64,000 nt of DNA from Mytilus trossulus. Its lineage: Eukaryota. Location of the stretch: contig NC_086382.1 of NCBI RefSeq assembly GCF_036588685.1, positions 59,520,001 through 59,584,000 on the forward strand, written 5' to 3'. The notes below the pieces were generated by a model. That model ran no database searches. It worked only from the letters and a program-made list of their open reading frames with translations, and had not been told where the DNA came from. Shown here piece after piece: positions 6,437 through 32,590 of the stretch. The number at the start of each line of letters is the position of its first letter. Positions within the stretch are counted from its first letter, which is position 1. The position numbers and the translations under genes were made by a program.

Positions 6437-7046
6437 CTGGAATAATCTCAGCCAAAGCAAAGAAAGTGTACCACAGCATTTATTTATCTCATATGAGAAG
6501 TGAGATTTTCATCCTTCTTATGGTCTTTTGTTCATGCCATAAGTTTGGCATAATCGAAAAGTTAAAAATTGACTCCACTCAAACACAATACACATGAATA
6601 TAAGTTTTACCTGAAATTTCAGATATAAAGTGTCAAATTTGTTTGCTGATGAACATGCATTCCTATTTCAAGAAATCTGTCAAACATCATGAACACCAAA
6701 CAATCATTCGATACAACTTATACAGCTGACCTATTGTTTACGTTATCCTAGAAACAGAAATAACATGAAAACTTAAAATTGACTAATGAAACATGAAAAC
6801 AAGGTCAAGGTCAAATAAACCTTGTCAGAAAGACATGTTCATCTACCAATCATTGCATAAACCAACTATAGTTAACCTATTGATACTATCATTAAATAAA
6901 TATACATCAAGAACAGGATTGATGCTTCCACATTTCTTATGTGCCTGTCCTAAGTCAAGGCCTGTAGTTAAGTGGTTTTCGTTGTTTCATGCCTGTCATA
7001 CTTGTTTTCCATAAATTGTTCATAATTTATAACAATACAGCTATAA

Positions 7047-7772
7047 AGGAGTAGGTTCAGTAAGACCCTCTTGCCACCCTGAGATGTGGTGTGAGTGCCA
7101 ATGAGACAACTCTCCATCCAAATAACAATTTAAAAATTAAACCATTATAGGTTAAAGTACGGCCTTCAACACGGAGCCTTGGCTCACACCGAACAACAAG
7201 CTATAAAGGGCCCCAAAATTACTAGTGTAAAACCATTCAAACGGGAAAACCAACGGTCTAATCTATATAAACAAAACGAGAAACGAGAAACACGTATATA
7301 TTACATAAACAAACGACAACTACTGTACATCAGATTCCTGACTTAGGACACATATATCGGTTATAAGCATCAAGTCATGCTAAATTACTGAAATCTTCAT
7401 TATTTTAGCATTTCATTAAATTTTAGACGGTTTCTGTCTTAAATGAAATTGGCCACATTTGTGTTCATTCATAGTATTGAAATGTAAGTTGTATTTGATG
7501 ATAAAACATAACATATATAAAAATTGAGGATGAACAGGGATGTGGCTACTTTCATTTTTGACAAAAACCATCTGAAAAGTGACGTTTTTTTTTGCAAATT
7601 TTATAGATTTTTCATATTAAAGCTTGAATTGGAACATTTTTAATGACTAAATCAGTTAAAATCTTTAAAATAAACTAATTGAATCAATTGAAATAGACAC
7701 TCAAGTGTTTAAAAAGTGTCCAAAATCGTTTCTTAGATGAGGTCTAAAACAGCCCTTACCGGAACTACTCCT
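7047..7772. mobile_element. MITE shared by both duplicate copies (partner 31482-32056)
   Basis: Termini AGGAGTAGGTTCAGTAAG...CTTACCGGAACTACTCCT. In this copy ~7070-7350 is replaced by another dispersed repeat. Confidence 0.6.
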
Positions 7773-8206
7773 TAGGCAATTGGTTTTGTCAGTTGAATTG
7801 TGTTTGGTGAATAGCTGACTCATTGGCAATTGCACCACATCTCCTTATTTATATATGGATCAATTTTTTGATAAAACAAAATAAAATAATGTTTTGAGTA
7901 GGACACAGCTTTGTATCTTTAAATTTTACAACAAACAGACATATTCCTTTTTATATTCCCCCTGAATTTGTTTATCATCAATTTTAATAGAATCATTCAA
8001 AAGGTTGAAATATGGAAACATGAAAATATCATAATACCAAATGAATAATTACAAAGAAAACATTTGAAGTTTAGCAACTTTTTATTTCCATTATAAAATG
8101 CCTCTTCTTTGATAGCACTTAGATAAAGAATTCAATAAAAATTTAATAGTACAGATCATTCATTTAATACAGGTTTTTAATTGACAGAGAACAAAGAAAA
8201 TAAATG

Positions 8207-14028: not shown

Positions 14029-17000
14029 CTTCAATATTGTCAAATAAAAACAGAAAATATAATTAAAATTTCAATTGTTCTTGAACAATTGAGAGGTCTT
14101 TCCTTTTCGTATTGTAAACTACATGTTCCAATAGTCGTAGAATGCATTGAAAAGCTCTCAAACACACATAAAACCGTTAAGATATGACAAAAATAACAAA
14201 TTTGCTTTTTAGGACATGACCTTGACTTTTATCCTTGTGACCTTTGAGAAGGTAATCGGTCCACGATGTCATTATAAAAGACCCATGGGTCGAGGACCTT
14301 TGGTTCAAGAGTTAAAGCTAATTTTGTCTTTTCAGAAACCGTTAACAGGGGTTATGCCCCTTAAGGGTATGTCAAAGCTCTTGGTTACAATGTAAAAAAG
14401 TTGCGCCTTAGTCAACTCAACATTGTTCACTATTTACTATTTCTGTAAGTATAATCGTTTTCGAGATATCTAATAAAAAGTTGAAAGGTCAAAGGTCAGG
14501 GTCAACCTTAAAAAGCTTTTAAACACATCTAACGAATGGACAACAAATATCATATTCCTGACTTGGTACAGGGATTTTCAAATGTTGAAAATGGTGGATC
14601 GAATCTGGTTTTATAGCGCTAAACCTCTCACTTGTATAACAGTTGCGTCAAATTCCATTATATTTACAACGATGCGTAATCAAAAAAGACATATTAGGTA
14701 AAATGCTCAAAATGTGGGTACAGAAGTCATCACTGTGGAACAATCTCAAAATAACAAATATCTAACAAAAAAGGGCACAGTAAGCGACTGGCATGTGACT
14801 GGTTTTCAAGCACGGTAATCGTATAACTTACGGTATTGTGACATCTAGCTGTTTCTCTTTGGTTTTCTTTTTTTAAGTCACTGTCCTATTAATAACTGTG
14901 GCAACTTGAAATGCCAAGGATTTCATATCCAATGAATAGATAACTTAACTTTGTTTTTTTATTTTTTTTATTCGAGAGTCACTGATGATTCTTTGTAGAC
15001 TAAACTCGCGTCTGGCGTATAACATTTTAATCCTGATATCGTTTCATATATATCTACATATATTTTATATAAATTATTTTCTTTCAGAGTATGTTCAGGT
15101 ATTCATGAAACTTAATAAATAAGATATACTGCGAAACCAAGTTTCACTGTAGAATAATTGTATTGTTTTAAAAATTTGAAATGTTTTACATAAGACTAAA
15201 ACGAGTCTCAATATTAGAGGGCCCAACGCAGCTAGTATGTTACTCTTAATAAAATTATACGAAAAATCTTATATATACATGTCAAAGGAAATTTGACTTT
15301 TAAATCTATACAACATCTAAAATGAGTTCATGCAGCTGCAATAATGAGTTGAGAATTTGTAGGCATCCATGCAAGAAACAAAATATCAAGATTAAAAGGC
15401 AAACTGAGTGGTTAAATTTATATTGCAATTGGTTTATGAAATCAGCATTAGACATCTGGTTTGAGGAAACTGGGATTTTCAAAAGGGTTATGAAAAAAAT
15501 ATGTATATTCAGAGAAAGTAAATAAAATATCCGCGCTTTAAAATGTTGATTCAAACAGAAGTTGTGTATATACAGTTTTGTATTCACAACTATCCAGCAT
15601 CGTTTTCAACAATAATGTGCAAGAATGTACACACACTAACCAAGTTTTAATAAACATAGTTTAACATTTTCATTATCTTCCTCACGGTCAATTATTTCAA
15701 TTTAAAAGTAAACAAAAATTCAGCAACAATCTTTTGGTGACCAGCGATCTTAGGTTCACGTGTTACTTTTCTTTTTTTTTAAGAAAGCAATTTGTAACCT
15801 TGGTCACCGTGTATTATCGTCTCGGTCACCCAGACGCTTGAATTTTATTAATCTTATTATGCGTCTGGGTGATCGATACTAATATAGGCACTAAACAAGC
15901 GGGTGTGATCGATTTTGACCTGATATGGTAAGAAAAATCTTATTTTACTTTTAATCTACTTTCAGTGTACATTTCTCAACATCTGAAATTCCGATGATAC
16001 ACGGTGTTGGAGTTGTCTTACAAAGATATAAGGGTTGCAATTAGCCATTTGGCATCTGCTCATGTTATATGTTAAAATTGAGAATGGAAATGAGGAATGT
16101 GTCAAAGCGATAACAACCCGACCACAGAGCATACAACAGCCGAAGGCCACCAATTGGTAGTTTAGTTTAAACATATTTTATTTGCAAAAGTAGCAAAAGG
16201 GATTGGACACAAGTTATAACAACATTAGAGACGTCCTCTCCCAATTGGTCTTCAATGTAGGCGTTCTTCAGCTGGCCCCTAAATAAATACGTATACTAGT
16301 TCAGTGATCATGAACATCATACTAACCTCTGATTTATACATAAGAAACTAAAATTAAAATCATACAAGACTAACAAAGGCTAGAGGCTACTGACTTGGGA
16401 CAGGCGAAAAAATGTGGCTGGGTTAAACATGTTTTTTTGAGATATCAACCCTCTTCCTATACATGCTATACCTCTGGGCAATGTAGAAAAAACAAATACA
16501 CAAGAATACGCACAGTTAAATTTAGTTTAAGAGAAGTCCGAGTCCGATGTCAGAATATGAAATAAAAGCCTTGAAAATAAACAAAATGACAATAAAAACA
16601 TAAATAACAGCAGACTACCAGCAGTTACAGACATGCCAGGCTAGAACTCAATTCAACTGATTGAAAGATTGTGTCTTCATAAAATAAATATATCAGACAC
16701 AATCTGTTAGGGGTTTAGTATTATACCATCATGAAATATGTGATACTATAACCCGTTACATGGTTTTCTATGAGTTTCAACATGAAAATATAAGTTCTAT
16801 TAAGAGTTTACAGAAAATCATTTTCTTACCGAAAATTAAACTTTTGAAAAACCTTAACAAAACATGACATTTAAACCTATTTGAAAAACTTAATCGTGAT
16901 AAACATTTAACCCCACACGCTACAACACCCCATTGTTAACCAGTCAGGCATATCTGCTAGATCTATTAAAATCTTAAACCGTAAGTTTAAGCGTAACGCC

Positions 17001-17689
17001 TATTTCATTTATAGAGATGTGTCTATTTACTGTGACAATAGTTCTTATAATATGACTTGTACAAATATCATTAAAAAATATTTTATTCATTTAAACTGTT
17101 TTTAACTTCAAATGATTAAAGAAAAAAAACCAATGATTGCATCTCAATTTAACTGCACTGACACTTTTAACTATGACGATCACTTTGCGTTCGTCCGTGG
17201 TGTGATCAATTAATGAACACTTATAAGAAATATTGTCTGGAACGAATTTTAACCATTAATTCGGTACAGACATGATGTATAACAAATTGTCTTCAGATTG
17301 TCCGTTAATTAATTTGGAACCTATAAAAAGTAAAGGGTTTAAACTCCATCAGGCAAATTTGATCTCAGTTGGATCTGGTGAATATTTTATGTCCTATTTT
17401 GTAATATAGATCTTCAACTGTTTCAGTCCTTGTATATCCTTAGCTTTCAAATATTCAGCTTTGTGCGTTCCCAGTGAAAGTAAACCCACAGAAACGTTTC
17501 GGAATCGTAACATTTATAACGTGTTTTTTTTTAAAACAAAGTTCAGACTAAATTATCCTGTAATAATTGAGTTTCTGCTATTGTTTATCAAAAGAACAAG
17601 TCATCTTGCAATATAGTAACCAATAAATTGCTATTGTCTGTTGGAATGTCCCTCAAAGTAAAAAAAAAGTTTCAAATCCTTAGAATGGA

Positions 17690-17935
17690 AGATTGATTGA
17701 TTGGTTATAAAGACCACTTTCAACACCATTGTGCTATTTCGCAGAAGTTTTATATGGATTGAGGAAGTCATAGTGCCCGTTGAACAATGTTGAAAAACCA
17801 CAAATATTTGGTAGGAAAACTGACAATCCTAGCCAATTAAGATTGAAGTCGAGGGCACAGCCCCGTGCAGGATTCGAACTCACAACCTATAGTGATGACA
17901 TGCTAGTGATGCAGTAGTTCGACCACTTTACATTA
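17690..17935 (-). mobile_element. tRNA-derived SINE, degenerate
   Basis: B-box-like GTGAGTTCGAATCCTGC on the minus strand (~17867-17883) and a (CAAT)n tail at ~17690-17703. Confidence 0.55.
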
Positions 17936-18702
17936 TTGAAGGACGCTCTCCAAACGATTCTACTACATACGAATACAGATATTGTACGACTGACTGTCAA
18001 TCGGTAACATCATTATTTGTTTTTGCCTTTCCAATTAAACCGATGTCCGTATGCAGTTATAATTATGCACGTACACATATGAACACACGTTGATACGTAT
18101 TTGTTGAACGCAATCTCTTAAATAAGAGTCTGATTTAATCTTTACGAATATGTTCAGGCAGTTCGTAGTGCCTAATTAATTTGACATTTTTGGGGAAAAT
18201 GTCGGCACTACCATTGAACGTTACAAACTACAGGTACAAATTAATGAAGGATCGCACTCGGTATTTTTTTCAAATTCAGGAAAAGAGAAATTTCACAATG
18301 GGAAAAATATAATCCTTTGTTCATTAAGTTTAATTTTTCAAACGAAACACACATTGTGAATATATATTTTAGTGTAAATAAAAGAATATAACAAAAAACC
18401 AAACCGGGCAAAATTAATGATGGGAAAGTCTGAAAAACTGAAAAATAACAATTAACAGAACGAGTAAAAAAAACCCTGCCATATTTCTGGCTTGGTGCAT
18501 GTATTTTCCAAAGAAATGGTGGATAGAACCTGGTTACATAGTTAAATCAACCTCCCACTTATATGGCAAATATTTACAGTTTCGTTATATTCACAAAACT
18601 GTGTATGCAACCAAAATAGACATAAATAAAGGCAACATTAGTATACCACTGTTCGAAATTCATAAATCGATAAAGAAAAAACAAATCCGAGATACAAACT
18701 AA

Positions 18703-19689
18703 AGCCTCGGTTACACCTTACCGGATAGCACAAACGGACGTCTAACGGATGAAAATAAAAGTTGTCCGTTCACAAAATTGTTATCCGTTGGGAGTCACTT
18801 GATGTGCTGACCGAATAAAACGGACGCGTAACGAAGGCAAAACGGACACACACCGGATATGCAACGTACGAGAAACGGAAACTAATCGGACAGAACGGAT
18901 GTCGAACGTACATCCAACGGACGAGTCCCGCTTAAAACGGACACATAACGGAAGCGTACCGGATAAAACGAATGAATAAGATATACAGAAAATTTAAAGG
19001 CGACAATAATAATACATGTTAATCGCATAAATATTCAAAAAGTTTCTATGTAACTGGTTTTGGTTTGGTCTTCAAAAATCCATCAAAGGGTAATGTCTGG
19101 CCTGAATAAGAGCTGCTTGATAGTGAAGACCTGCACTTACTTTAAAATCAATTATGAAAAATAAGAATTTATGACACTCAAGAAATCTGACAAACCAATA
19201 ATTGTTATTTCTGACGCGAAATTTTCAATAAGCATTTATCCGTTTCAGATCCGTTCATCGTCCGTTTTATCCGTTAAACGTCCGGTAGAAGTCCGTTTCA
19301 CATTCGTTCGACATCCGTTGTATCCGTTTAACGTCCGGTAGACGTCCGTTGGTGAATTTGACTACTAGACCTCCAACGGATGTATAACGGACAAGTAACG
19401 GATACGTAACGGAAACGGAACGGACGAGTACCGTACAAAACGGACGACTAACGGGCGTTCAACGGGCATGTTATCCGTTGGATGTCCGTTCGAAAATTTA
19501 AACATGCTCAAAATTTTCCAACGGACAGAACGGAGGTCGACGGATAAAACGTACTCTAAACGGACATGAAACGGATGTGGACGGACGTCTAACGGATAAG
19601 AACGGACGCCTAACGGACATGAGCGGATTGAAAAAAAAGTTATCCGTTAGGCGTCCGTTCGAGCTTTCCGGTAAGGTATGACCGAGGCT
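18703..19689. mobile_element. PIF/Harbinger-type MITE
   Basis: TIRs AGCCTCGGTTACACCTTACCGGA / TCCGGTAAGGTATGACCGAGGCT with TAA TSD. Many internal AACGGA/TCCGTT motifs. It interrupts a dispersed repeat whose uninterrupted copy is at ~29715-29865 (minus). Confidence 0.85.
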
Positions 19690-20783
19690 TAAAACTGAGG
19701 TAAACGCGTCAAATATAAGAAAACTACGACACAACAGTAACACAACATTAAAATGTAACACATACATGGCACAGGTTATTTTAAGATAAAACTGGTGGGT
19801 TGAAACTGGTTTTGTGGCATGTCAAACCTCCCGCTTTCATGGCAATGTTAATTATAACATTAAAATAACAATATTACAGGACAGAACAGCAATACAAATA
19901 AATGGGGAAAACATAGAACAGAGAAACAAACGATTGATATCCAACAAAAGGTACTTTGTTAAAAAAGACAATACGCCAGACGTGCGCCACGTCCACACAA
20001 GACTAACCAGTGACGCCTAGATGAACTAAAAAGTTTGAAAGCCAGAAGAAGTGCAAAGTTGAAAAGCATCGATGACTAAAATTTTAAAAAGTCTCGACCA
20101 AAACGGCCAGGATTATTCACCTGGGACAACAACATCCTTTAATATTATTTAGAATTTTGAATAAAACATATCCTTGTAAATTTTATGAAATTACTTTCAA
20201 TAGATATACATGGTAAAAATGAAGTGGTGGATAGCTACAGAACAAAAACGGATAAAATACATAACCATTGTTACGCTCAAAGTGACATCACATTTGAATT
20301 AAAAAACGGGTTTCCAAAAATTAAGAAAGAATTTAGATGAACTTCAAGATTTAATCTGTATGGCTTATCTAACGCTTATTATTAACATTGAAAATTACAA
20401 TACTAATTAATATCAAATTGTAGTAGCAATTCGACAACCAATTGTATTATCTAGCTATGTCGAGCTTCCTCTGTATAAAGGTTAAAAAAAAGAAATATGA
20501 TAGAGTTTTAACGGTAAATTTCATTTTGAGTTCACCGAGATCAAATTTCTATGTCGTATTCATTTTGTCTGTTACATCAATCTTGCTCGAAAAATATAAG
20601 GAGGAGTAAATGTTACGGTTTATCATCAAAGAATGTTCTGCCGACATTATATTATGTTTTAATTTCAAATTATTTCTAAAAGCACAATAACACAATAGCT
20701 GAATAATATGACCCAAGTTTGTTTTCTTAAACACTAGCTAATGACTACGCCTTTTCATTCCTATATAAAAGTTAAGTTTCGAC

Positions 20784-20814
<31 letters not shown>

Positions 20815-22023
20815 CACAAAGATTAAGGGACAAGTCAAATTTTTGGGGGATTGGCACCGGTGCAATTCACATTTCTCCCTTAAAACATCTATGATCTACC
20901 CTCTGCATATACAAAAAAACTGTATGAAATATCTGCTAAATAAGTATACGTCCTATGTAATCTATGAATAAATCAAACAGACTTTAACTTCATTTTTATC
21001 AGATTAACATAGATAAAATATAGTAGTCTTTGGATTTGTCTGAAATTTTAACTGATCTCATCCTTGAAGAAGGCAAATAAGATATATTCAATGGTGTTCA
21101 AATATTGCAGAGTTGAAATATTAGCTCTCCACAAAAATAACCACTTTTATGGTGCATATTTATGAATTCATTTATGCAATAATATTTTTTTATGTTTTCC
21201 TTGTGATATGCCAAAAAAAAAAAAATCGATGGGAATGCATTATTATGCCTTCGAACCAAAAACTATTTTTGCATATCACATGGAACACATAATATTACTG
21301 TTATTATTACTTTGAATTTTCACGCGCATAGATGATCTTGAGTTAATATGCCATTTATCAGTCTACACATACATACATTCATTGTGATTTTATATTTAAA
21401 CCGTCCATGTTATACTAAAATCGATATAACCCCCTGAATGTGGATATAACCCATTTGATATTACGACGGCTATTATTAGAATCTATTTATTAATTATAAA
21501 AATATGTCAAAACAATAGAACTGCAATTATAATGGAAGATGTTTACATGAAGAGTAATACTCTACAATAGTTTATGAACAATTTTTACAGTGTTATCTTT
21601 TTTTTTAAATATATATATATTTTTCTGTTTGAACTTTGTTCTTTTTTGCCTTAATTTTCTAGCCAGAATATTTTTATTGACAAACAGTTTTCCTTATTTT
21701 TAAAGATGCATACTCTATCTAATCCTTCCTTTTTTTAATGATTTGCATTTGATTAATTTGTACTACACTAATGGCAGTATATCATATGGTGCCTATCATA
21801 TCACTTATTTAAAGCTCTATCAATGTTCTCTTTTTACATTTTTTTATTGTTGTTTATTTTGTTGTTTATTAATTTTATGTTTTTTGTTATTATTTATTTT
21901 TTCTGTTCGTATATTTTTTTCAACCTTTTTAAAATTATTGCATGATTGTTCTATAAACATAATATTAATGTATAGACTGGAAATTGTATTTCCATTGTTT
22001 TTACTTGTTTGTTCCTCAATTAA

Positions 22024-22765
22024 GGTTTATGTACCCTTCTGTAGCCATTTTTGTACGAATTTTTCAAACCTCAATTGTATCAAAACTACAGATATAATGA
22101 ATAAAAGAGATAGGCCATTTAATACATATTCCAATGGGAAACTTGATGCAAAGCATTATTTTTTACTGTTTCATTGCATTTGATAGAAAAAGAGGACTTT
22201 GTGGCAAATAAATCAAGATTTTATAGAAAATCCACAGCCTTTAATACAGAGATTTTTTTTATAAAATTTGAAACATAAATTACTCACTTGATTTTCTATG
22301 ATGTGCTAGTGTTTATTTTTTACAAAAAGTTCTAAGAAACCTGTAAATTCCAAAACACCTCGTGCTGAGTCACTAAAGTCGAGCGTACCCTAAAAGGTGT
22401 ACTTGATTTTGGCCATATATATTTATATTTGTTTTAACCAATAACTACATTTATAAACTTGTTTTAAGGAAATCAATGCTAGCACTGCATGCAATAATCC
22501 TATATCTATCAGTCATCAAGTTGCCAAATATGAGAGTACAAGGATAAGGGCTGTGGATTTTCTATAAAAATCTTGATTTATTTGCCACAAAGTCCTCTTT
22601 TTCTATTAAATGCAATGGAACAGTAAAAAATAATGCTTTGCATCAAGTTTCCCCTTGAAATATGTACAAAATAGCCTATCTCTATTATTCATTATATCTG
22701 TTGTTTTGATACAATTGAAGTTTGAAAAGTTCGTCAAAAAATGGCTACAGAAGGGTACATAAACC
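22024..22765. mobile_element. Long-TIR MITE with TTAA TSD (Kolobok-like)
   Basis: ~220 bp inverted repeats at 22024-22240 and 22548-22765, GG...CC ends, TTAA on both sides. Confidence 0.85.
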
Positions 22766-23293
22766 TTAATCTTGTTTATTCTGTTGTAATGAAATTTGTA
22801 TAGGCTATTCTCCACATTCATACATATGCCATTAAATGCTGATGTCCTATCAGTAATTCAGTAAGAACATGTGTGTGTCCTACTGCGTTTTGCCCCCTCC
22901 CCCTCCAATAGATATTGACCGGTCCCTAACGTCAGCATTAATAAAAGGCTATTCGCTAAATGCTATAATCATAGTATAAAATACAGGATATAATAAAATA
23001 ATTAAGTAAGTGATCAAATGTGAAATATCCTACTTTTACCTCTATATCTAGAATTAACATATACATATTTGATTTAAATAATGTGAGTTGTGTTATAATC
23101 AAAATGAAAACCACCATCGCATAGGTTACATTAAATGCAATGTGTATTATATTATAAAGATTAGTGTTCAGTCAAGTTATAAACCCGCTCAGGTGAAAAA
23201 TATCAATGGTTATATAAAACAACTTGTACTATCGTAATTCCAGTATTGTCAAATATCAAATTTACTGATATCAACTATTTTGAAATTTTGCAG

Positions 23294-26200
23294 GGGGCGA
23301 TTATATGTTCAGCTGTAAAAATCAACGCCACTACAGGAAGCGGTTCAGAGATCATTCACAAAGAAACCGACAAGAACGCTCACAATGAAACCGACCAGAA
23401 CGCTCACACTGAGCAACAACAAAGAAAGAAATCAAAAGAAGAAAACATCAATTCAAAGATAAAACATAAAAACTTGTTTTTAAAAGTGTTTGGATGTAAT
23501 CATACAGATACCAACTTAAAAGCACGATTAAAACGCATTACAAACGAGGACTTAATCGTTGAAGATATCAGACATGATGGCAAAGACACATTTTTCACAG
23601 TACATCTCAGAAGTTCCAAACTGACAAAAAAGATTATTTTTTTTATTTACAAAGAAAACAAAGAAAACGAAAACACCGAAAATGAAATTTTTATAATAGA
23701 TAAACAACAAGAAGATCTCAAAGAACAACCTAACTTTTTCCAAGACAAACAAAACAAATTAAAAGAATTAATGGACAAAGAAGCATGTGACGTTGTGTCC
23801 AATCATAACAAAATGATAAACGAGGTACAACAAAGAATTAAAAATGTCGCTAAAAATTTGGTAATGGACTCACATGAGTACAACGAAGAAGGGGAATTGG
23901 ATATCGTTCCAAAAATTGAAAACTTACACACCAATTTTACTGTAGAATCAACTTTATCCCACGGTACAAAACAGGAAATCGATGCTCTACAAGATAAACT
24001 TTCAGAACTTCGATTGCAACAGAAAGAATTCAAAGATTTTATAACATGTATGGATGAAATGTTTCAGAAACATAAATCATCTAAAAACTCTGCAATGAAA
24101 GTTTATTCCAAGTTTCAGATAGAATGCAAACATCTGAAATCTGCATTGCCTATGTATGCTAGAAGAAATGAAATTGTTTCAACTGTTACAACAAATCAAG
24201 TTTCAATTATCATAGGAGAAACAGGTTCTGGAAAGAGCACTCAAGTTACCCAATATTTATATCAAGCAGGTCTGGCAGATTCGGGATTAATAGTTTGCAC
24301 ACAACCACGAAAAATTGCTGCAACCAGCTTGGCTACACGAGTTGCCCATGAGCTAAACACATCTGTTGGCAATCTAGTTGGATATCACGTTGGTATGCAG
24401 ATGAAAACGTCAAAAACAACAAAAATTATTTACATGACTGATCAAATGCTTTTAAATCTTTGCTTAAAGGATGAAACGTTTTCAAAATACTCGTGCATTA
24501 TAATCGATGAAGCCCATGAAAGAAGCATATACACAGATTTGCTTTTAGGAATGATCAAAACAAGTTTAACTAAAAGACCTGAACTAAAAGTTGTAATCAC
24601 ATCTGCAACAATCGAACCGGAAATATTTGTAAATTTCTTTGGTACATGCCCTGTTTTAAAGATAGCTGGAAGAATGTTTCCGGTAGATGTCATTTGGCCG
24701 ACTGAAAATGAGGCTGAGGAGGATTATAAAAGCGCAGCATTGAAGAAAACAGTATATGTCCACGAAAAAGAACAGAGTGGAGATATCCTGACATTCTTAA
24801 CATCGCCGTTAGAAATCGAGAAATGTTGCAATAATTTTGAAAAGACTTTCAAGGATACGAATAACTTTATATGTCTGCCTCTCCATGGCCGTTTACAACC
24901 ACAAGAACAACAAAAAGTATTTGAACCAAGCCCTGTAGGAAAACGAAAAATAGTTTTTGCTACTAATAGTGCTGAAACTTCGATAACCATACCTGGAATT
25001 AAATATGTCATCGATACTGGAGTTGCAAAAGAAATGTTATATGATCCACAAAAGAACATAAACGCGTTAAACGTAACCAATATTACCAGAAGTTCAGCAG
25101 AACAAAGGAAAGGTCGGGCTGGAAGAACTGAACCAGGCAAATGTTATCGGCTTTATACAGAAAACACTTATAATAATATGGAAACAAACTCAAAGCCCGA
25201 AATATCAAGAGTTCACTTAGGACAAGCTCTCCTTAAGCTATATGAGCTTGGGGTTAATCCACTACAATTTGATTTTGTACAAAAGCCATCACAACATTTG
25301 ATAGACACAGCGATGGAAACGTTGGAGCTTGTTGGAGCTGTTTCTCAAAACAAGATAACCGAACGAGGGAAATGGATAGCAAAGCTTCCGATCGATCCTA
25401 AATTCGGTGCGTTTGTGTATGAAGCTATAAAAGAAGGGATTGGGATTGAGGGAATTGTTTTGTCAGCTTGCTGTGGAACGAGTAGTATGTTTTACAGATC
25501 AGGGTCAGAAAGTCAAAAAAACGAAGCTGACAAACGAAAAGTCCGTTTTTGTCATGAAGGAGGAGATTTCATGACAATGCTAGAAGTATTCCGTGAATGG
25601 CACAGCAAGCCTGAAAAATCTAAGAGTAATTGGTGTAGCCAGAATTCAATTAATAATAAAGTATTACGTGGAATAAGAGAGACAGTCAATGAGATTTTGA
25701 ATGTCCTGAAAAAAGAACAGGGAATACTAATGCCGTTTCAACTCAAAACACCAAAAGATGTTGACGAAAAACTTCAAGAGATGTTGTTCAAGATATTTAG
25801 ACAAAACCTTTGCCATTATCTAGGACACGACAAGGCCGGATATTTAGTTGTACAGAAAGATCAAATCGTGCAAATCTTTCCAGCATCGTCTTTAAAAACA
25901 CTTGGACTTCAACCGGACTGGATTGTAATAGAGCGTGTTTTGAAAACATCTCGTGATTTCGCAATTAATATTACTCCAGTAAAAGATTCGTGGTTACAAA
26001 AGGCATTAGCAGATGATTTACTAAATTTTGACTTAAATGCCGTTCAAAGTCAAAGGGTTGAGCAAGCAGCATTCTGTGCAGTTGGAGAAAAATTGTTATC
26101 GAATTTTGTGGGTGTAAGATATTCTGAACTTCGAAATTTGGAAAAAACAATGCGGCAAGTACTTGATGGAACTTTTGTTACAATAGAGGCATCTAAGGAA

Positions 26201-28471
26201 TATGGTGAAATAACTGCATTTGCGACAGAGAAGAACAAGGAAACAGTTAAAGCTATGATAAATGATCGCTTAAGCTTATTTAAAGGTACAATAAAAGGCG
26301 AGATTAAGGAATTCTACCTATCACCTTTAAAAAAAGGCGTTAAAGTAGTGGTTGGAGCAGGGATGGACATTGTTGATGTACTGATGCCAAATGAATACAA
26401 GACCGTTGTTGTGAACGCTACAGATAATTCTATCTCGGAGAAGGACATTTGTGAATACTTTGAAAAATTTGGTAACGTTGTCAATGCATATAAATTCACA
26501 AATAGCAAAGATAGGACCAAATGGGGGAAAATAACATTTAAACGAAGAGAAGACGCCGAGTCGTCGGTCCAATCGACAAAGGATAAAAGTATAAATGCAA
26601 TTCCAGACATAGGTTATCAACCTGTAAACGCCATTGTTAGCCTTTACACCATCAGAGCAAAGATAGAATGGTGTAGACGTCCAACGTTTGCATTTATTAA
26701 ATTCAACGATTCTTCACTTGTGCAAAGAGCATGCAAGACACCGATTTCCATCGGGGAAATGTCAGTAAGAATTACAAAAGGCAAAGTAAATGCCTCTGAG
26801 GTCCATGTTGCAAATCTCTGCAATTGTACCACAGAAGATGAGTTGCGCACAGCTTTTATCAATGCATTATCACTTGAATCAGGTGCAATAGAGAATATAA
26901 CCATCAGAAAGAAGAATGTAAAAACGAATGAATGTGAACTTCAGACTTTGAAAGAAAAGATTGAGTCTAAATTGAATGAGTATGTCATAGAAGGAACGTA
27001 TTATCTTGATTTAAAAATTCCAAGAGACAACCACGTTACCTTTTTGGCCTTCGTGTCGTTTTCCTCACCAGAAGAGGGAATGGCAGCCTATGCTGGCATA
27101 CATAAAAGATTCAAGATAAACTATCAAACAGTATCGATGTCAGTAGAATTCAAAACCTCAGTTGCTGTTCGAAAACATCTCTTCCCGATGTACGAAGAAA
27201 CATTAAGCAAACTTTCGAAAACGCTCGACAAAAATTTCAATGTAAAACATCTCACAAAGACACTAAAAAATGGGAATGTGCTAGTGGAATTGCTATGTGA
27301 GAACAGCGAGAACATTATGAAAGCAAAAACGGTTGTGGAAAAAGTTATCGACGGAAAAAAGTATGTCACAGATCAACCGGGTGAATTGGGAAAATTGTTT
27401 AATCCGGGCGGTAAGAGATTTTTTGAAAGAGTGAAAAATGAGACCAACACGATTATCCATTTTGACGCTCGGGATTTCTCTATTATCATCCATGGGACAA
27501 CAGAATCGCAAGAAAAAGCTGCAGAAATGATAACAATGTGTTTAAGAGATCTTAGAATTGGCGTATCACAACAAATGGCTTTAAAGGGACCAGACAAACC
27601 AGTTGGAGTGATGAGAGAACTCATGATGCGATATGGTTATGATTTAAATTTGCTTGTTGATGAATATGGTTTGAAAAATGTTGAACTTGATCGTCGGAGA
27701 CATATTTTGACAGTTACTGGTGAGCAAAAAGCAGTTCAAATAGTCATTGAGAAAATGCAAATGGTTATTGAAGAAACCGGACTAAAAATGAAGGGAAGAG
27801 TTCTGAAATCTAGTAAAACACGTGAATGTGTTGTCTGCTTTTGTGAAATAGAAGACGGTAACATGTACAGATTAGAAGTTTGTGGCCATTCCTATTGTAA
27901 ACAATGCGTTCAGTTTCAGTTCCAGGCTGACCTCAACTCTCTTCCGGTATGTTGCAGCAGTGAAGCTTGCGATGAAAAGTGGGCGTTGAAAGATATAACA
28001 ATAATCGCAGATAAAACAAATAATCCAGTTGACCTTTTAGTAGAGAAAGCTACAAGCTCTTTCGTTGCCAAAAATTCGATAGCATATAAATACTGCACAA
28101 CTCCCGATTGTCCTATGATTTATAGGGTATCAGAAAAGGAAAATCTATTCACATGTCCGCAGTGTGAGAGTCGAATTTGCACAGGATGCAACAAACAATA
28201 CCATGATGGATTAACATGTGAACAAGTAAAAAAAGTAGCATCAACCAAGGAGGCTGATGATAATCTCCATTTATTTCTTCAGGAGTGTGAATTGAACATT
28301 AAGAAATGTCCAAAATGTTCAACTTTGATAGAGAAAATCGACGGATGTAATCATGTTACATGTCAAGCGTGTAGAACTAACATTTGTTGGGTTTGTCTGG
28401 ACCACTATCCCACTGACGTTGAATGTTATGTACATCTCAGCCAAGAGCATGGTGGTTGCTTCAATTTCTAA
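23294..28471 (+). CDS. DEAH-box RNA helicase-RBR E3 ubiquitin ligase fusion (DEAH11/DEAH12-like), single large coding exon
   Basis: Uninterrupted ORF with GETGSGKST (24215), DEAH (24506), SAT, ATNSAETSITI and QRKGRAGR (25103), then HA2/OB-like, RRM-like (FEKFGNV..WGKITF) and KH-like segments. It ends with RING1 (CVVC..CGHSYCKQC, 27827), IBR (CTTPDC..CPQC..C..C..H) and RING2 (CPKC..IEKIDGCNHVTC..C..ICWVC, 28307). The ORF-track start is TTG; a TTTTGCAG acceptor ending at 23293 suggests an unseen upstream exon. The first in-frame ATG is at 23770. Confidence 0.92.
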   Translation, partial: GAIICSAVKINATTGSGSEIIHKETDKNAHNETDQNAHTEQQQRKKSKEENINSKIKHKNLFLKVFGCNHTDTNLKARLKRITNEDLIVEDIRHDGKDTFFTVHLRSSKLTKKIIFFIYKENKENENTENEIFIIDKQQEDLKEQPNFFQDKQNKLKELMDKEACDVVSNHNKMINEVQQRIKNVAKNLVMDSHEYNEEGELDIVPKIENLHTNFTVESTLSHGTKQEIDALQDKLSELRLQQKEFKDFITCMDEMFQKHKSSKNSAMKVYSKFQIECKHLKSALPMYARRNEIVSTVTTNQVSIIIGETGSGKSTQVTQYLYQAGLADSGLIVCTQPRKIAATSLATRVAHELNTSVGNLVGYHVGMQMKTSKTTKIIYMTDQMLLNLCLKDETFSKYSCIIIDEAHERSIYTDLLLGMIKTSLTKRPELKVVITSATIEPEIFVNFFGTCPVLKIAGRMFPVDVIWPTENEAEEDYKSAALKKTVYVHEKEQSGDILTFLTSPLEIEKCCNNFEKTFKDTNNFICLPLHGRLQPQEQQKVFEPSPVGKRKIVFATNSAETSITIPGIKYVIDTGVAKEMLYDPQKNINALNVTNITRSSAEQRKGRAGRTEPGKCYRLYTENTYNNMETNSKPEISRVHLGQALLKLYELGVNPLQFDFVQKPSQHLIDTAMETLELVGAVSQNKITERGKWIAKLPIDPKFGAFVYEAIKEGIGIEGIVLSACCGTSSMFYRSGSESQKNEADKRKVRFCHEGGDFMTMLEVFREWHSKPEKSKSNWCSQNSINNKVLRGIRETVNEILNVLKKEQGILMPFQLKTPKDVDEKLQEMLFKIFRQNLCHYLGHDKAGYLVVQKDQIVQIFPASSLKTLGLQPDWIVIERVLKTSRDFAINITPVKDSWLQKALADDLLNFDLNAVQSQRVEQAAFCAVGEKLLSNFVGVRYSELRNLEKTMRQVLDGTFVTIEASKEYGEITAFATEKNKETVKAMINDRLSLFKGTIKGEIKEFYLSPLKKGVKVVVGAGMDIVDVLMPNEYKTVVVNATDNSISEKDICEYFEKFGNVVNAYKFTNSKDRTKWGKITFKRREDAESSVQSTKDKSINAIPDIGYQPVNAIVSLYTIRAKIEWCRRPTFAFIKFNDSSLVQRACKTPISIGEMSVRITKGKVNASEVHVANLCNCTTEDELRTAFINALSLESGAIENITIRKKNVKTNECELQTLKEKIESKLNEYVIEGTYYLDLKIPRDNHVTFLAFVSFSSPEEGMAAYAGIHKRFKINYQTVSMSVEFKTSVAVRKHLFPMYEETLSKLSKTLDKNFNVKHLTKTLKNGNVLVELLCENSENIMKAKTVVEKVIDGKKYVTDQPGELGKLFNPGGKRFFERVKNETNTIIHFDARDFSIIIHGTTESQEKAAEMITMCLRDLRIGVSQQMALKGPDKPVGVMRELMMRYGYDLNLLVDEYGLKNVELDRRRHILTVTGEQKAVQIVIEKMQMVIEETGLKMKGRVLKSSKTRECVVCFCEIEDGNMYRLEVCGHSYCKQCVQFQFQADLNSLPVCCSSEACDEKWALKDITIIADKTNNPVDLLVEKATSSFVAKNSIAYKYCTTPDCPMIYRVSEKENLFTCPQCESRICTGCNKQYHDGLTCEQVKKVASTKEADDNLHLFLQECELNIKKCPKCSTLIEKIDGCNHVTCQACRTNICWVCLDHYPTDVECYVHLSQEHGGCFNF

Positions 28472-28959
28472 ATGATGTTCAAATTAGTGTCATGGAAGAA
28501 CAAATTCTGGAACTAAGTAATTGCTTTAAAGTTTTTACTTTCAAAATGCGTTCATAGTCATGATAGCAGAGCGAAATTAATGATAACACAACAAACTTGA
28601 AACTTAAAAATAACTTAGACTAACAAAAAAATGTATAATTGTATATCTAATCTGTACACAGAGTTAATTGTTTCTTTATGACCTATGTAAATGCGGAAAA
28701 TATATTTTACATTGTCAAAATTATAAATTTAACAACTACAAAATAATTTATGTGAATTCGTTGTGTTTGGCGTAATTTTGTTCTTCGATATCATAAAAAT
28801 GATAAGCATTATCATGCTTTAAGTATCATAATAGTTATCAAAAGTACCAGGATTATAATTGTATACGCCAGACGAGCGTTTCGTCTACATAAGACTACAT
28901 AAACTATGACTCATCATAGATAAAATTGAGAATGGAAATGGGGAATATGTCAAAGAGAC

Positions 28960-29125: not shown

Positions 29126-32100
29126 GAGACAACAATACGACAAAAGAGTAGGAGGCCACCATCGGGTCTTTAATGCATCGAGATAATACCAGGATTAGAA
29201 ATGATGTACCCATCAGAGAACTCAAACCAACAATTTTTTCAAATAGTCACGGCTGCCTTGTTTGTTGATTAGCAAGAAACTAGATACACTCTTAAAATTT
29301 AGCCTTAGTTTGGTTAAATTGGTGAAAAATTATATTTCAGATAAATCAGAGATTTTTTCTTAAATCTAAAGACGAAGGTGACAATGATGGTGGTAAGGGA
29401 AATTTTTCATCTTGCCAGGGATAGTATGTATTATTAGTAATACATTGCACAAAATTTCTGCACATATTTATCAAAGCATGTAATGAAGGAACAGTACTTT
29501 CACCGTTTTTTCTCTCGTCTAATGATCAATCAGGCGCTGTAGCACCTACCCGGGGATTAGTGAATATTTTTTAAGATGTTAAAAAAACTACATCTGTATT
29601 AAAACACTCAATTTCAACAAAATAAATACTTTGTAATGGGAAAAGAAATCTCAACCCATCATTTTTTCATAAAATGTCCAGTACCAACTCATGAAAAATA
29701 GCCATTGTTACATTATAGTTCGTTTCTGTGTGTGTTACTTTTCGGTGTTGTGTCGTAGTTCTCTTATTTTTGATACGTTTTCCTCAGTTTTGTTTGGAAG
29801 TCAGACTTTTTTTTCTCTATCGATTGATGAATTTTGAACAGCGGTATACTACTGTTACCTTTATAAATCTCAATATTTTGTCATATAAATTTGCACAAAT
29901 GTGTCAATGTTACATAAACATTTCAAGCATCCTTATAACCAGTTTACTGAACTTACCAGAAAATTATGTATGTATATAGCAAATCAATTACCTTTTGATA
30001 GACTGCCAACATGTAAATATTTTGGTATACATACAGGGAAAAAATATGAAGTAGATCACATAAAAGATCAGACATGAACAAATCCGCTAGAAAGGTAAAA
30101 ATTGACAGCAAACACCACAAGTACAGAACATTGCTCTGCAGATTTCCCCCAAAACAGAGATATATGTTATTGTAACGGAAGAGAAGGAATATGATTTATT
30201 GGTCTACAAGTACATGTTCAGATTCAGCATCTCAAAGAACTACAAGATTTCAATTATTGTTAAAATCAACCTAAGTTTAATTTTGGACCCTTTGGATCTT
30301 AAGGAAAATCAATTTGAAATTTGGACCAAAAATTAAGAATCTAAATTCATGGTTAGATTCCGCATATGAAAGAACCCCAACTATTTACATTTTGATGAAA
30401 TCAAACAAAGTTTAATTTTGGCCCCTTTTGGTCCCAATTTCCTAAACTGATTGGGACCGAAACTCCCAAATCAATCCCAACATTCCTTATGTGGTCATAA
30501 ACCTTGTGTTTAAATTTCATAGATTTCTACTTACTTATACTAAAGTTATTGTGCAAAAACCAAGAAAAATGCTATAAGGGCCCATTTTTGCCCCTATTTC
30601 CTAAACTATTAAACAAAAACCTCCAAAATCAATCCCAACTTTCCTTTAGTAATTATAAACCTTGTGTTAAAATTTTATTGATTTCCTTTTACTTATACTA
30701 AAGTTATTATCCAGAAATCATGTCTTTGGACAATGACGACCCAGACGATGAGAACGTGATACCAATTTCTGACCAAAATTTGTTAAATTTTTGCAGTCAC
30801 ATAAAAATTGACCCCACTCAAACAAAATACACATGACTATATGTTTTACTTTAAATTTCAGATATAATGCATCAAATTGATTAGCTGATGTAGCAAGCAT
30901 TACTTTTTTTTATAAATCTCTAACAATTTTCATTTTTTCACTTATATTACTATATCTAAATTAAAAAATGATTTGTTTTTTCAAGTGCAGCTGCTTAAAT
31001 TTCGCACCTGCATTACTTATCATAATTGAATTTTATATGATACACTGAATATAGGTAAACATTCTTACAGTATTTAATAGCAGACTTAATTACAAAAATT
31101 TAAGTGGACCAATAAACCATTAAAATTAGGTCAAGGTCAGAAGAACCCTGTCAATGAACATCAAACAATCATTCGATACAACTTATACAGCTGACCTATT
31201 GTTTACGTTATCCTAGAAACAGAAATAACATGAAAACAAGGTCAAGGTCAAATAAACCTTGTCAGAAAGACATGTTCATCTAACAATCATTGCATAAACC
31301 AGCTATAGTTAACCTATTGATACTATCATCAAATTAACATACATCAAGAACAGTTTTGATGCTTCCACATTTCTTATGTGCCTGTCCTAGGTCAAGGCCT
31401 GTAGTTAAGTGTTTTTTGTTGTTTCATATCTGTCATATTTGTTTTCCATTAATTGTTCATAATTTAAAACAACAGCTATAAAGGAGTAGGTTCAGTAAGA
31501 CCGCTTTTTGGCCCCAAAATATAGCAGTTTCACAAAAGTTTGAAAATGTAATCCTTAAGCTATATACCTGACAGTAGAATGCTTCTGCTACAAAAATATG
31601 GGCTATTTATCATGTTTATACAATACAATGCACATATATCGGTTATAAGCATCAAGTGATGCTAAATTACTGAAATCTTCATTATTTTAGCATTTCAGTT
31701 AAATTTTAGACGGGTTTCTGTCTTAAATGAAAGTGGCCGCATTTGTGTTCATTCATAGTATTCAAATGTGATAAAGCATAACATATATAAAGATTGAGGA
31801 TGAACAGGGGTGTGGCCACTTTCATTTTTGACAAAAACCATCTGAAAAGTTACACTTTTTTTTGCATATTTGATAGATTTTTCATTTTTAAGCTTGAATC
31901 AAAGCGTTTTTAATGACTAAATCAGTTCAAATCTTTCAAATAAATTAATTGAATCAATTGAAATAGACACTCAAGTGTTTAAAAAGTGTCTAAAATCTTT
32001 CGTTAGATGAATCTGAAATTTGAGGTCAAAAAACAGCCTTTACCAACCTACTCCTTAGGCAAATGGTTTCTCAGTTGAATTATGTCATATTTTTCATTTG

Positions 32101-32464
32101 GGGCCTTTTATAGCCGACTATACAGTATGAGTTTTTGTCCTAGTTGAAGACTGCATGGTTGCCTATTATTTCTTACACCCACTTCATTTAAACTTTGGTG
32201 AATAGCTGACTCATTGGCAATCTCCTTATTTATATATAGATCATTTATTTTATAAAACAAAATAAAATTATGTTCTGAGTAGGACACGGCTTTGTATCTT
32301 TATATTTTACAAAAAACAGACAGATTCCTAAATATATTTCCCTTGAATTTGTTTATCATCAATTTTAATAAAATATTCAAAAGTTTGAAATAATATAGAA
32401 CTATAAAAATAATATAACTACCAAATGAAAATTTACAATGAAAGCATTTGAAGTTTAACAACTT

Positions 32465-32470
32465 TTTATT
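32465..32470 (-). terminator. Candidate TOPBP1 polyadenylation signal AATAAA
   Basis: First AATAAA ~120 nt after the stop codon; conserved in copy A at 8081-8086. Confidence 0.4.
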
Positions 32471-32590
32471 TCCATTATAAAATGCTTCTTCTTTGATAGC
32501 ACTTAGATAAAGAATTCAATAAAAATTTAATAGTACAGATCATTCATTAAATACAGGTTTTTAATTTACAGAGAACAATGAAACTAAATG

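What the first reader, a model, noticed from the sequence alone, without database searches (positions are those of the whole stretch)
23294..28471. Intact RNA helicase-RBR ubiquitin ligase fusion in one 5.2 kb exon in an animal genome
Seen: one open exon joins an N-terminal coiled coil, a complete DEAH helicase, RRM/KH-like modules and a full RING1-IBR-RING2 that keeps the catalytic GCNH cysteine. Known: this architecture defines the plant helicase subfamily of RBR ligases (Arabidopsis DEAH11/DEAH12), and I know of no human, fly or worm gene with it. RBR ligases form a ubiquitin thioester, and some act in innate immunity (HOIP/HOIL-1). Inference: a single-chain RNA sensor/unwinder that ubiquitylates targets is a candidate antiviral or RNP quality-control system. 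One huge exon beside an intron-dense housekeeping gene suggests retroposition, transfer or a mobile, expanding immune-type family.
Basis: partly seen in the sequence, partly recalled or inferred. Interest (0 to 1): 0.85.

Follow-up and report, generated by a model that had tools for sequence, protein, structure and literature searches.

The report
Mussel helicase-RBR ubiquitin ligase gene
This is an intact, transcribed mussel gene that fuses an RNA helicase to an RBR ubiquitin ligase; the family is already known in invertebrates and plants, has seven copies in this mussel, and has no studied function in animals.

Summary
Window 23294-28471 (+) is one stop-free 1725-codon exon. It encodes a complete DEAH helicase, an array of RRM-like and KH modules, and a full RING1-IBR-RING2 with the catalytic Cys (GCNH).

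Position 23294 is a splice acceptor, not a start codon. RNA contigs from two studies join it to an upstream exon ending in ATG at 15927, across a 7.4 kb intron. So the gene is spliced and expressed, at low depth.

The architecture is not plant-only. It is the "Helicase" RBR subfamily, already reported from animals (Marin, PMC2904391). Full-length relatives occur in molluscs, crustaceans, a spider, a brachiopod and cnidarians, with partial ones in an annelid and a sponge.

The genome is Mytilus trossulus by identity of its paralogues. It holds at least seven single-ORF copies in three clusters, two of them with in-frame stops. All belong to one Mytilus clade.

The window copy arose by DNA-level duplication, because homology to its neighbour includes intron and flanks. 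It did not arise by retroposition. It is under purifying selection (dN/dS 0.26). An immune role was not tested.

Side finding: decapod crustacean homologues nest inside bivalves, next to scallops. This suggests an old cross-phylum transfer.

The scan's other note on this locus (s1-826862) lies on the same window, not on other DNA.

The parts
15830..15927 (+). Exon 1: 5' UTR plus the start codon ATG (15925-15927) as its last three bases. An in-frame TGA lies at 15916-15918. The donor gtaaga starts at 15928.
   Evidence: Loose ends of RNA contigs before 23293, in X1 and X3 (two studies), read AAGCGGGTGTGATCGATTTTGACCTGATAT. That is window 15897-15926, and the next base G is shared with the acceptor. 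The overhangs are 84 and 98 nt, so the 5' limit of the exon is a minimum. Database protein P0001 equals M plus the exon-2 translation.
15928..23293 (+). Intron, 7366 nt, GT...AG. It holds repeats and an unassigned 146-aa ORF.
   Evidence: Parts of it (16785-17583 and 23031-23293) are homologous to the region upstream of paralogue L002.
23294..28471 (+). Coding part of exon 2: 1725 codons plus the TAA stop.
   Evidence: RNA contigs tile 23293-28708 at 95-100% identity in 4 runs from 3 studies.
23468..23698 (+). N-terminal small alpha/beta (ferredoxin- or RRM-like) domain, aa 59-135.
   Evidence: AlphaFold model with pLDDT about 90. Only weak fold matches, to TAP/NXF1 RNA-binding and ACT domains, at E of 5e-3 or weaker.
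23729..24142 (+).
   Evidence: AlphaFold model. Conserved E..AL.DKL.EL..QK.EF motif in the alignment of 33 homologues.
24125..26008 (+). DEAH/RHA helicase core (RecA1, RecA2, winged helix, ratchet, OB), aa 278-905. Motif I GETGSGKST 24215-24241, DEAH 24506-24517, SAT 24602-24610, motif VI QRKGRAGR 25103-25126.
   Evidence: Aligned end to end with Prp22/DHX8 structures at E=1e-134. Pfam DEAD, Helicase_C and OB_NTP_bind. Motif coordinates.
26033..27181 (+). Array of alpha/beta RRM-like modules, aa 914-1296. It includes RBD_DEAH11/RRM_1 at aa 1018-1100 (26345-26593).
   Evidence: Pfam. AlphaFold pLDDT 86. Foldseek matches to multi-RRM proteins Prp24, raver1 and HuR.
27182..27793 (+). KH-type modules, aa 1297-1500. 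They include KH_DEAH11 at aa 1427-1494 (27572-27775).
   Evidence: Pfam KH_DEAH11 E=1.3e-19, 70 bits against a cut-off of 27; KH_DEAH11_2nd is weak. Model.
27827..28411 (+). RBR supradomain: RING1 27827-27970, IBR 28046-28219, RING2 28295-28411. The catalytic Cys codon TGT is at 28346-28348 (aa 1685) and is followed by N-H.
   Evidence: ARIH1 E=1e-19, HOIL-1 E=7e-17. Foldseek matches ARIH2, HOIL-1, ARIH1 and HOIP. Most RBR zinc ligands and the catalytic Cys are invariant, and the remaining RING2 Cys at least 90% conserved, in 33 homologues. Coordinates.
28472..28708 (+). 3' UTR. The end is approximate and no genomic poly(A) tract follows.
   Evidence: Contigs end at 28631, 28651 and 28708. Sequence.

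Best explanation
The window holds a functional, transcribed member of the ancient Helicase subfamily of RBR E3 ubiquitin ligases (DEAH11/DEAH12-like). It lies in the mussel Mytilus trossulus.

Shown:
- The gene has a short 5' exon that supplies the ATG, a 7.4 kb intron, and a 5.2 kb exon carrying the rest of the 1726-aa protein.
- All helicase motifs are present; the RBR zinc ligands and the catalytic Cys are invariant or at least 90% conserved across 33 homologues.
- It is one of at least seven single-ORF paralogues, in three chromosomal clusters, that form a Mytilus-only clade.
- It arose by DNA-level segmental duplication next to a BRCT (TOPBP1-like) gene.
- It is under purifying selection in every domain.

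Inferred from the families:
- The DEAH core, closest to Prp22/DHX8, binds single-stranded RNA and moves 3'->5' using ATP.
- The flanking RRM-like and KH modules add RNA affinity or specificity.
- The C-terminal RBR takes ubiquitin from an E2 onto Cys1685 as a thioester and passes it to proteins sitting on the bound RNA or RNP.
- RNA engagement possibly releases RBR autoinhibition.

Which RNPs are targeted, and whether the role is immune, is unknown.
For: - Intact ORF and domain order.
- Splice junction in RNA contigs from two studies, and contigs tiling the exon in four runs.
- Database model P0001 = M + exon 2.
- Helicase core aligned with Prp22/DHX8 over RecA1 to OB, E=1e-134.
- RBR aligned with ARIH1 and HOIL-1, catalytic Cys in register. 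Invariant or at least 90% conserved zinc ligands and Cys across 33 homologues.
- High-confidence fold of aa 905-1725 (pLDDT 86) with RBR and multi-RRM matches.
- Seven paralogues. One Mytilus clade at 100 support.
- Helicase and RBR halves give congruent trees.
- dN/dS against the tandem paralogue is 0.26 overall and 0.14-0.36 per domain, with dS 0.30. No 60-codon window exceeds 0.75.
- Homology to L002 includes intron, acceptor and 3' flank.
- Literature places the subfamily in animals: PMC2904391.
Against: - No biochemical or genetic data exist for any animal member; literature searches gave nothing.
- Expression evidence comes from assembled contigs of runs only guessed to be RNA. The spliced junction shows RNA, but levels, tissues and induction are unknown.
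- The mechanism (RNA-coupled ubiquitylation of RNP proteins) is inferred from domain families only.
- Exon 1 has no detectable counterpart at the paralogues. Its ATG is therefore a copy-specific solution, and protein-level use is unproven.
Confidence: 0.8

Rival explanations
1. Immune or accessory reading: the protein is an RNA sensor and unwinder that ubiquitylates targets in antiviral defence, and the family expands as an immune-type family.
For: - Lineage-specific expansion to at least 7 copies, with two carrying in-frame stops, which looks like birth-and-death turnover.
- Several proteins encoded on the same contig in other molluscs: Mercenaria, Haliotis, Patella, Mizuhopecten.
- Patchy distribution in animals (PMC2904391).
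- Fast divergence between Mytilus clusters, 43-66% identity, and a long C10 branch.
- From general knowledge, some RBR ligases (HOIP, HOIL-1) act in innate immunity.
Against: - No expression data after challenge.
- dN/dS is well below 1 in all domains, with no hot spot.
- A clam study treated its DEAH12 homologue as a single-copy nuclear marker (PMC8765752).
- The one functional study found concerns cotton fibre development (PMC13407882).
- No literature links the family to immunity.
Confidence: 0.2
2. The big exon marks a processed retrocopy (retroposition), possibly a young pseudogene.
For: Almost the whole coding sequence lies in one 5.2 kb exon. A reverse-transcriptase fragment lies at 4755-6479 on the minus strand, 9 kb upstream of exon 1.
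Against: - The gene has a spliced 5' intron.
- Homology with paralogue L002 runs through 263 nt of intron plus the acceptor, and beyond the transcript's 3' end.
- No genomic poly(A) tract follows the 3' UTR.
- All seven paralogues, old and young, match as single continuous open frames.
- The ORF is intact, under purifying selection and transcribed.
Confidence: 0.03
3. This copy was acquired by horizontal transfer or rides on a mobile element.
For: The family shows a transfer-like pattern elsewhere: decapod proteins nest inside pteriomorph bivalves. The gene sits between two direct copies of a neighbouring gene's 3' part.
Against: - The window copy lies deep inside a Mytilus-only clade, next to its tandem paralogue and the M. 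edulis orthologue of that paralogue.
- GC content matches the surroundings.
- No terminal repeats or transposase were tied to the cassette.
- The flanking direct repeat is explained by segmental duplication.
Confidence: 0.03

Closest known systems
Helicase ('Plant I') subfamily of RBR E3 ligases: Arabidopsis DEAH11/DEAH12 and the invertebrate proteins that NCBI names 'ATP-dependent RNA helicase DEAH12, chloroplastic-like'
   Same: Same order of parts: N-terminal region, DEAH/RHA helicase with OB, RRM-like and KH modules, C-terminal RING1-IBR-RING2. The family-specific Pfam domains KH_DEAH11 and RBD_DEAH11 score above threshold. Full-length alignment at 36-43% identity to mollusc, crustacean, brachiopod and coral proteins.
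   Different: It is a Mytilus-specific, fast-diverging paralogue, only 43% identical to the C1 copies of its own genome. Its start codon is supplied by a copy-specific upstream exon. Plant sequences were not fetched, so the direct distance to DEAH11/12 was not measured.
Prp22/DHX8 and other spliceosomal DEAH helicases
   Same: The helicase core aligns end to end (RecA1 to OB) at E=1e-134, with all motifs conserved.
   Different: It lacks the S1/RS N-terminus of Prp22. It carries about 820 extra C-terminal residues holding the RRM/KH array and an RBR ligase.
Ariadne (ARIH1/ARIH2) and HOIL-1 RBR ligases
   Same: These are the best sequence and fold matches for the RBR. The catalytic Cys-x-His of RING2 is in register.
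   Different: It has no Ariadne, UBA-like, UBL or NZF domains. Regulation by neddylated cullins or LUBAC partners is therefore not expected. A helicase and RNA-binding modules take the place of those regulatory domains.

Membership tests
Helicase subfamily of RBR E3 ligases (DEAH11/12-like) | A DEAH-box helicase and an RBR supradomain in one polypeptide, with the helicase N-terminal | tested here: met
   A single stop-free frame carries both.
Helicase subfamily of RBR E3 ligases (DEAH11/12-like) | Family-specific domains between helicase and RBR (Pfam KH_DEAH11, RBD_DEAH11) | tested here: met
   KH_DEAH11 scores 70 bits against a cut-off of 27; RBD_DEAH11 scores 32 against 28.4. KH_DEAH11_2nd scores only 15.6 against 27, below threshold.
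Helicase subfamily of RBR E3 ligases (DEAH11/12-like) | The RBR clusters with plant and fungal Helicase-subfamily RBRs rather than with Ariadne, ARA54 or others in a tree | not tested
   No plant or fungal sequences could be fetched. Only animal members were placed in trees.
RBR E3 ligases (general) | RING1-IBR-RING2 with complete zinc ligands and the catalytic Cys (followed by x-His) in RING2 | tested here: met
   Aligned to ARIH1 at E=1e-19 with GCNH in register. The zinc ligands and Cys1685 are invariant or at least 90% conserved in 33 homologues. Fold matches to ARIH2, HOIL-1 and HOIP.
RBR E3 ligases (general) | Forms an E3~ubiquitin thioester and ubiquitylates substrates | not testable with these tools
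   This needs an in vitro E2 discharge and autoubiquitylation assay with a Cys1685Ala control.
DEAH/RHA RNA helicases | Motifs I, Ia, II (DEAH), III (SAT), V and VI, plus winged-helix, ratchet and OB C-terminal domains | tested here: met
   Motifs located. Aligned over 628 residues with the Prp22 helicase core. OB_NTP_bind scores 30.7 bits against 29.5.
Processed retrocopy | Homology to the source copy is limited to the mature mRNA, with a poly(A) remnant and no intron | tested here: not met
   Homology to L002 includes intron, acceptor and 3' flank. A 7.4 kb intron is spliced. No poly(A) tract is present.
Immune-type expanding gene family | Induced by infection, presence/absence variation, positive selection | tested here: inconclusive
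   Copy-number expansion is seen. The pairwise test showed no positive selection. Induction and presence/absence variation could not be measured: the runs were contigs only and the single run search was already used.

The most novel reading that the evidence does not exclude
The helicase-RBR family is an accessory system in marine invertebrates that is gained and lost, and is sometimes passed between phyla. On this reading, reptant decapods acquired their copy from a scallop-lineage bivalve, mussels expanded theirs to seven, and the protein works as an RNA-activated ubiquitin ligase in antiviral or RNP surveillance.
Probability: 0.15. Interest if true: 0.75.

Novelty: new member of a known kind. 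Interest (0 to 1): 0.4.

Why it matters
The helicase-RBR fusion is one of only three RBR subfamilies found on both sides of the eukaryote tree (PMC2904391). I found no function reported for any animal member.

A well-supported gene model helps anyone who wants to test what an RNA helicase wired directly to a ubiquitin ligase does. Here that model comes with evidence of splicing, purifying selection, a domain map and a named catalytic residue.

The mussel expansion and the decapod-in-bivalve tree give two evolutionary handles on whether the family is dispensable or accessory.

The gene itself is not a new kind of system.

Tried and rejected
- **One script call returned nothing**. The AU test was repeated on a smaller set.
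- **Literature searches** for DEAH12/DEAH11, helicase plus RING-between-RING, IBR plus helicase plus bivalve, and decapod-bivalve transfer found no functional or immune study of animal members.
- **The ESM Atlas search** only returned the same family, without taxa.
- **The N-terminal domain fold search** gave no significant match.
- **A search for exon 1 counterparts** upstream of paralogues L002 and L003 found none.
- **Retroposition, pseudogene and direct horizontal origin** of this copy were considered and rejected (see rivals).
- **The joined exon 1 + exon 2 coding sequence** was not assembled or searched by me. Exon 2 was searched by reference, and database protein P0001 stands for the joined product.
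- **Operator limits:** The single read-laying run used 5951 letters.
Full report

Yes. The window has a single open frame at 23246-28471 on the + strand: 1741 codons, and the only ORF over 150 aa in the 22-30 kb stretch listed. At the window's base composition, the chance of 1741 stop-free codons is about 3e-62.

Translation from 23294 gives 1725 residues. Pfam places the domains in this order:

| Domain | Residues |
|---|---|
| DEAD | 294-441 |
| Helicase_C | 481-612 |
| OB_NTP_bind | 838-903 |
| RBD_DEAH11 / RRM_1 | 1018-1100 |
| KH_DEAH11_2nd (weak) | 1368-1417 |
| KH_DEAH11 (E=1.3e-19) | 1427-1494 |
| IBR | 1585-1642 |
| IBR_1 (RING2) | 1668-1706 |

- **Helicase.** Motifs GETGSGKST, TQPRK, DEAH, SAT, TNSAETSITIPG and QRKGRAGR are all present. 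The core aligns end to end with Prp22/DHX8 structures at E=1e-134.
- **RBR.** It aligns with ARIH1 (E=1e-19) and HOIL-1 (E=7e-17). GCNHVTC lies on ARIH1's GCNHMVC, so the catalytic Cys is residue 1685 (nt 28346-28348), followed by the usual x-His. In an alignment of 33 homologues most RBR zinc ligands and this Cys are invariant, and the remaining RING2 Cys are at least 90% conserved.
- **C-terminal model.** An AlphaFold model of aa 905-1725 is confident (pLDDT 86, pTM 0.70). It shows a string of small alpha/beta modules followed by the RBR. Foldseek matches the RBR to ARIH2, HOIL-1, ARIH1 and HOIP, and the module array to multi-RRM proteins such as Prp24, raver1 and HuR.
- **N-terminal model.** A model of aa 1-310 (pLDDT 80) shows a disordered first 40 residues. 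A small ferredoxin- or RRM-like domain follows at aa 59-135, then long helices at 146-197, 223-259 and 264-283. The small domain has no significant fold match.

**2. Gene model and expression**

Position 23294 is not a start codon. It is the first base after a splice acceptor (ttttgcag|GGGGCG), and the next in-frame Met lies about 190 residues downstream.

The public protein encoded on this same contig, P0001 (1726 aa), is M followed by the translation from 23294.

I laid the assembled contigs of four public runs on 22900-28850.
- Contigs tile 23293-28708 at 95-100% identity.
- In two runs from two different studies, a contig continues upstream of 23293 with AAGCGGGTGTGATCGATTTTGACCTGATAT.
- That string is window 15897-15926. 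It is followed by G|gtaagaaaaa, that is, ATG at 15925-15927 and a strong donor.

So exon 1 ends with the ATG. An in-frame TGA lies 9 nt upstream of it. The intron is 15928-23293 (7366 nt), and exon 2 runs from 23294 to about 28630-28710.

The junction shows that these contigs derive from spliced RNA. The gene is therefore transcribed, apparently at low depth, since the contigs are fragmentary. Contigs cannot give levels, tissues or induction.

In the tandem paralogue L002, an in-frame ATG follows the equivalent acceptor (GKNMSST). In the window copy that codon is ATA, and exon 1 supplies the start. Exon 1 has no detectable counterpart near L002 or L003.

Exon 2 was used by reference, and P0001 stands for the joined product.

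**3. What family, and how widespread?**

The whole-length search returned over a hundred full-length relatives at 35-84% identity with the same Pfam set. Many are named by NCBI 'ATP-dependent RNA helicase DEAH12, chloroplastic-like'.

Taxa with full-length relatives:
- bivalves, gastropods and a chiton
- decapods and krill
- the spider Uloborus
- the brachiopod Lingula
- corals and Nematostella

A tubeworm and the sponge Geodia have partial sequences named DEAH12.

[quoted passage not shown] It also notes several independent losses in animal lineages (PMC2904391). A clam study used 'DEAH12' as a single-copy nuclear marker (PMC8765752).

So the architecture is not plant-specific, and it is not new in animals. 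I found no functional study of an animal member. The only functional paper found concerns cotton fibre development (PMC13407882).

**4. Copies in this genome and origin of this one**

The genome search found seven near-full-length copies, each matching as one continuous frame. Because a stricter first look was used, that count is a floor.

| Chromosome piece | Copy | Position / state |
|---|---|---|
| C10 | L003 | 59.463 Mb, 66% identity, 2 in-frame stops |
| C10 | L002 | 59.481 Mb, 85% identity |
| C10 | window copy | 59.543 Mb |
| C9 | L004 | 3 in-frame stops |
| C9 | L005 | open |
| C1 | L006 and L007 | nearly identical (dS 0.005), 10 Mb apart, opposite strands, long N-terminal extensions |

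Two own copies are identical to proteins named Mytilus trossulus, so the genome is M. trossulus.

In trees, all Mytilus copies form one clade with full support. The window copy is sister to L002 plus an M. edulis protein. The expansion is therefore Mytilus-specific, and the window/L002 split predates the edulis-trossulus split.

Helicase-only and RRM-KH-RBR-only trees agree with each other, so the fusion has evolved as one unit in animals.

Evidence that the duplication was DNA-level and not retroposition:
- Nucleotide homology between the window and L002 runs from 23031 to 28831. That span includes 263 nt of intron, the acceptor and sequence past the transcript end.
- Homology reappears at 16785-17583 (intron) and at 29197-29390.
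- No genomic poly(A) tract follows the 3' UTR.

The gene lies in the roughly 15.8 kb between two direct copies (3794-14063 and 29865-44533, 80-94% identical) of the 3' part of a minus-strand BRCT gene. This agrees with the scan's other note on this window (s1-826862) and fits segmental duplication.

**5. Selection**

Against L002, dN=0.078 and dS=0.302, giving dN/dS=0.26.

| Region | dN/dS |
|---|---|
| N-terminus | 0.36 |
| Helicase | 0.14 |
| RRM array | 0.27 |
| KH | 0.34 |
| RBR | 0.21 |

No 60-codon window exceeds 0.75. Both copies are maintained by purifying selection, and this simple test gives no sign of an arms race.

A tract at aa 522-641 has almost no synonymous differences. This suggests gene conversion between the tandem copies.

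**6. How it most likely works**

Shown: an intact helicase, RNA-binding modules and an RBR with its catalytic Cys sit in one expressed, constrained protein.

Inferred from the families:
- The Prp22-like DEAH core binds single-stranded RNA and translocates 3'->5' with ATP.
- The RRM-like and KH modules add RNA affinity or specificity.
- The RBR accepts ubiquitin from an E2 on Cys1685 and transfers it to proteins on the bound RNP.
- Most studied RBRs are autoinhibited (general knowledge), so RNA engagement may be the activating signal here.

The targets are unknown. The immune reading is compatible with the expansion, the copies carrying stops, the patchy distribution and the fast divergence, but no direct evidence supports it.

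**7. Side finding**

Decapod proteins (lobster, crayfishes, porcelain crab, swimming crabs) form a clade whose internal order matches decapod relationships.

- That clade sits inside pteriomorph bivalves as sister to scallops. Support is 100/100 in a careful LG+C20 tree, and the enclosing clade has 96/99. Both half-protein trees show the same placement.
- Krill sits outside the clade that unites molluscs and decapods; its position relative to Lingula is unresolved.
- Forcing molluscs together without decapods costs 143 log-likelihood units (AU p=6e-52). The group was named after the tree had been seen.
- By raw identity, lobster is as close to scallops (49-52%) as to crabs (50-51%), against 39% to krill.

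An old bivalve-to-decapod transfer is the simplest reading. Hidden paralogy with many losses is the alternative.

**8. Verdict**

The family assignment is right.

The claim of novelty in animals is wrong. Retroposition and transfer of this copy are not supported. The immune role is open.

The gene is a new member of a known kind. Interest is moderate, because the family's animal function is unstudied and because of the transfer-like pattern in decapods.

Noticed in passing
Proteins P0015, P0019, P0025, P0033, P0121, P0122 versus P0020, P0022, P0023, P0034 (not in the window): Decapod crustacean helicase-RBR proteins nest inside pteriomorph bivalves as sister to scallops. Support is 100/100 in the careful mixture-model tree, the AU test rejects mollusc monophyly at p=6e-52, and both protein halves agree. 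Krill falls outside the mollusc-plus-decapod clade. This is a candidate ancient bivalve-to-decapod gene transfer, or hidden paralogy.
   Followed up: partly
window 3794-14063 and 29865-44533: Two direct copies (80-94% identical) of the 3' part of a minus-strand BRCT (TOPBP1-like) gene flank the helicase-RBR gene. The upstream copy is detached from the rest of that gene, which continues to about 64 kb. This matches the scan notes s1-826862 and s1-827287.
   Followed up: partly
window 24857-25216 (aa 522-641, RecA2) versus L002: This tract has almost no synonymous differences (pS 0-0.05), against 0.3-0.4 elsewhere between the tandem paralogues. Gene conversion between the copies is the probable cause.
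   Followed up: partly
L006 (C1:80.69 Mb, +) and L007 (C1:91.14 Mb, -): Two nearly identical paralogues (dS 0.005) lie 10 Mb apart in opposite orientation. Their open frames are 3015 and 2865 aa, with an N-terminal extension of about 900 aa that has no Pfam hit. They are either a very recent inverted duplication or an assembly duplicate.
   Followed up: no
L003 (C10:59.463 Mb) and L004 (C9:3.82 Mb): Two paralogues carry in-frame stops in this assembly (2 and 3). NCBI still annotates L004's locus as a 1562-aa protein (P0011). M. galloprovincialis has a 1951-aa protein (P0003) that groups with L003 in the tree.
   Followed up: no
window 4755-6479 (-): A 574-aa ORF carries a reverse-transcriptase fragment (zf-RVT, weak RVT_1). 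It is a retroelement remnant inside the orphan BRCT-gene copy.
   Followed up: no
window 36619-38677 and 59829-62421: Two large minisatellites (periods of about 83 and 48 nt) lie within the BRCT gene region. The second repeats an ATGGTAAG exon-end/donor-like unit on the minus strand.
   Followed up: no
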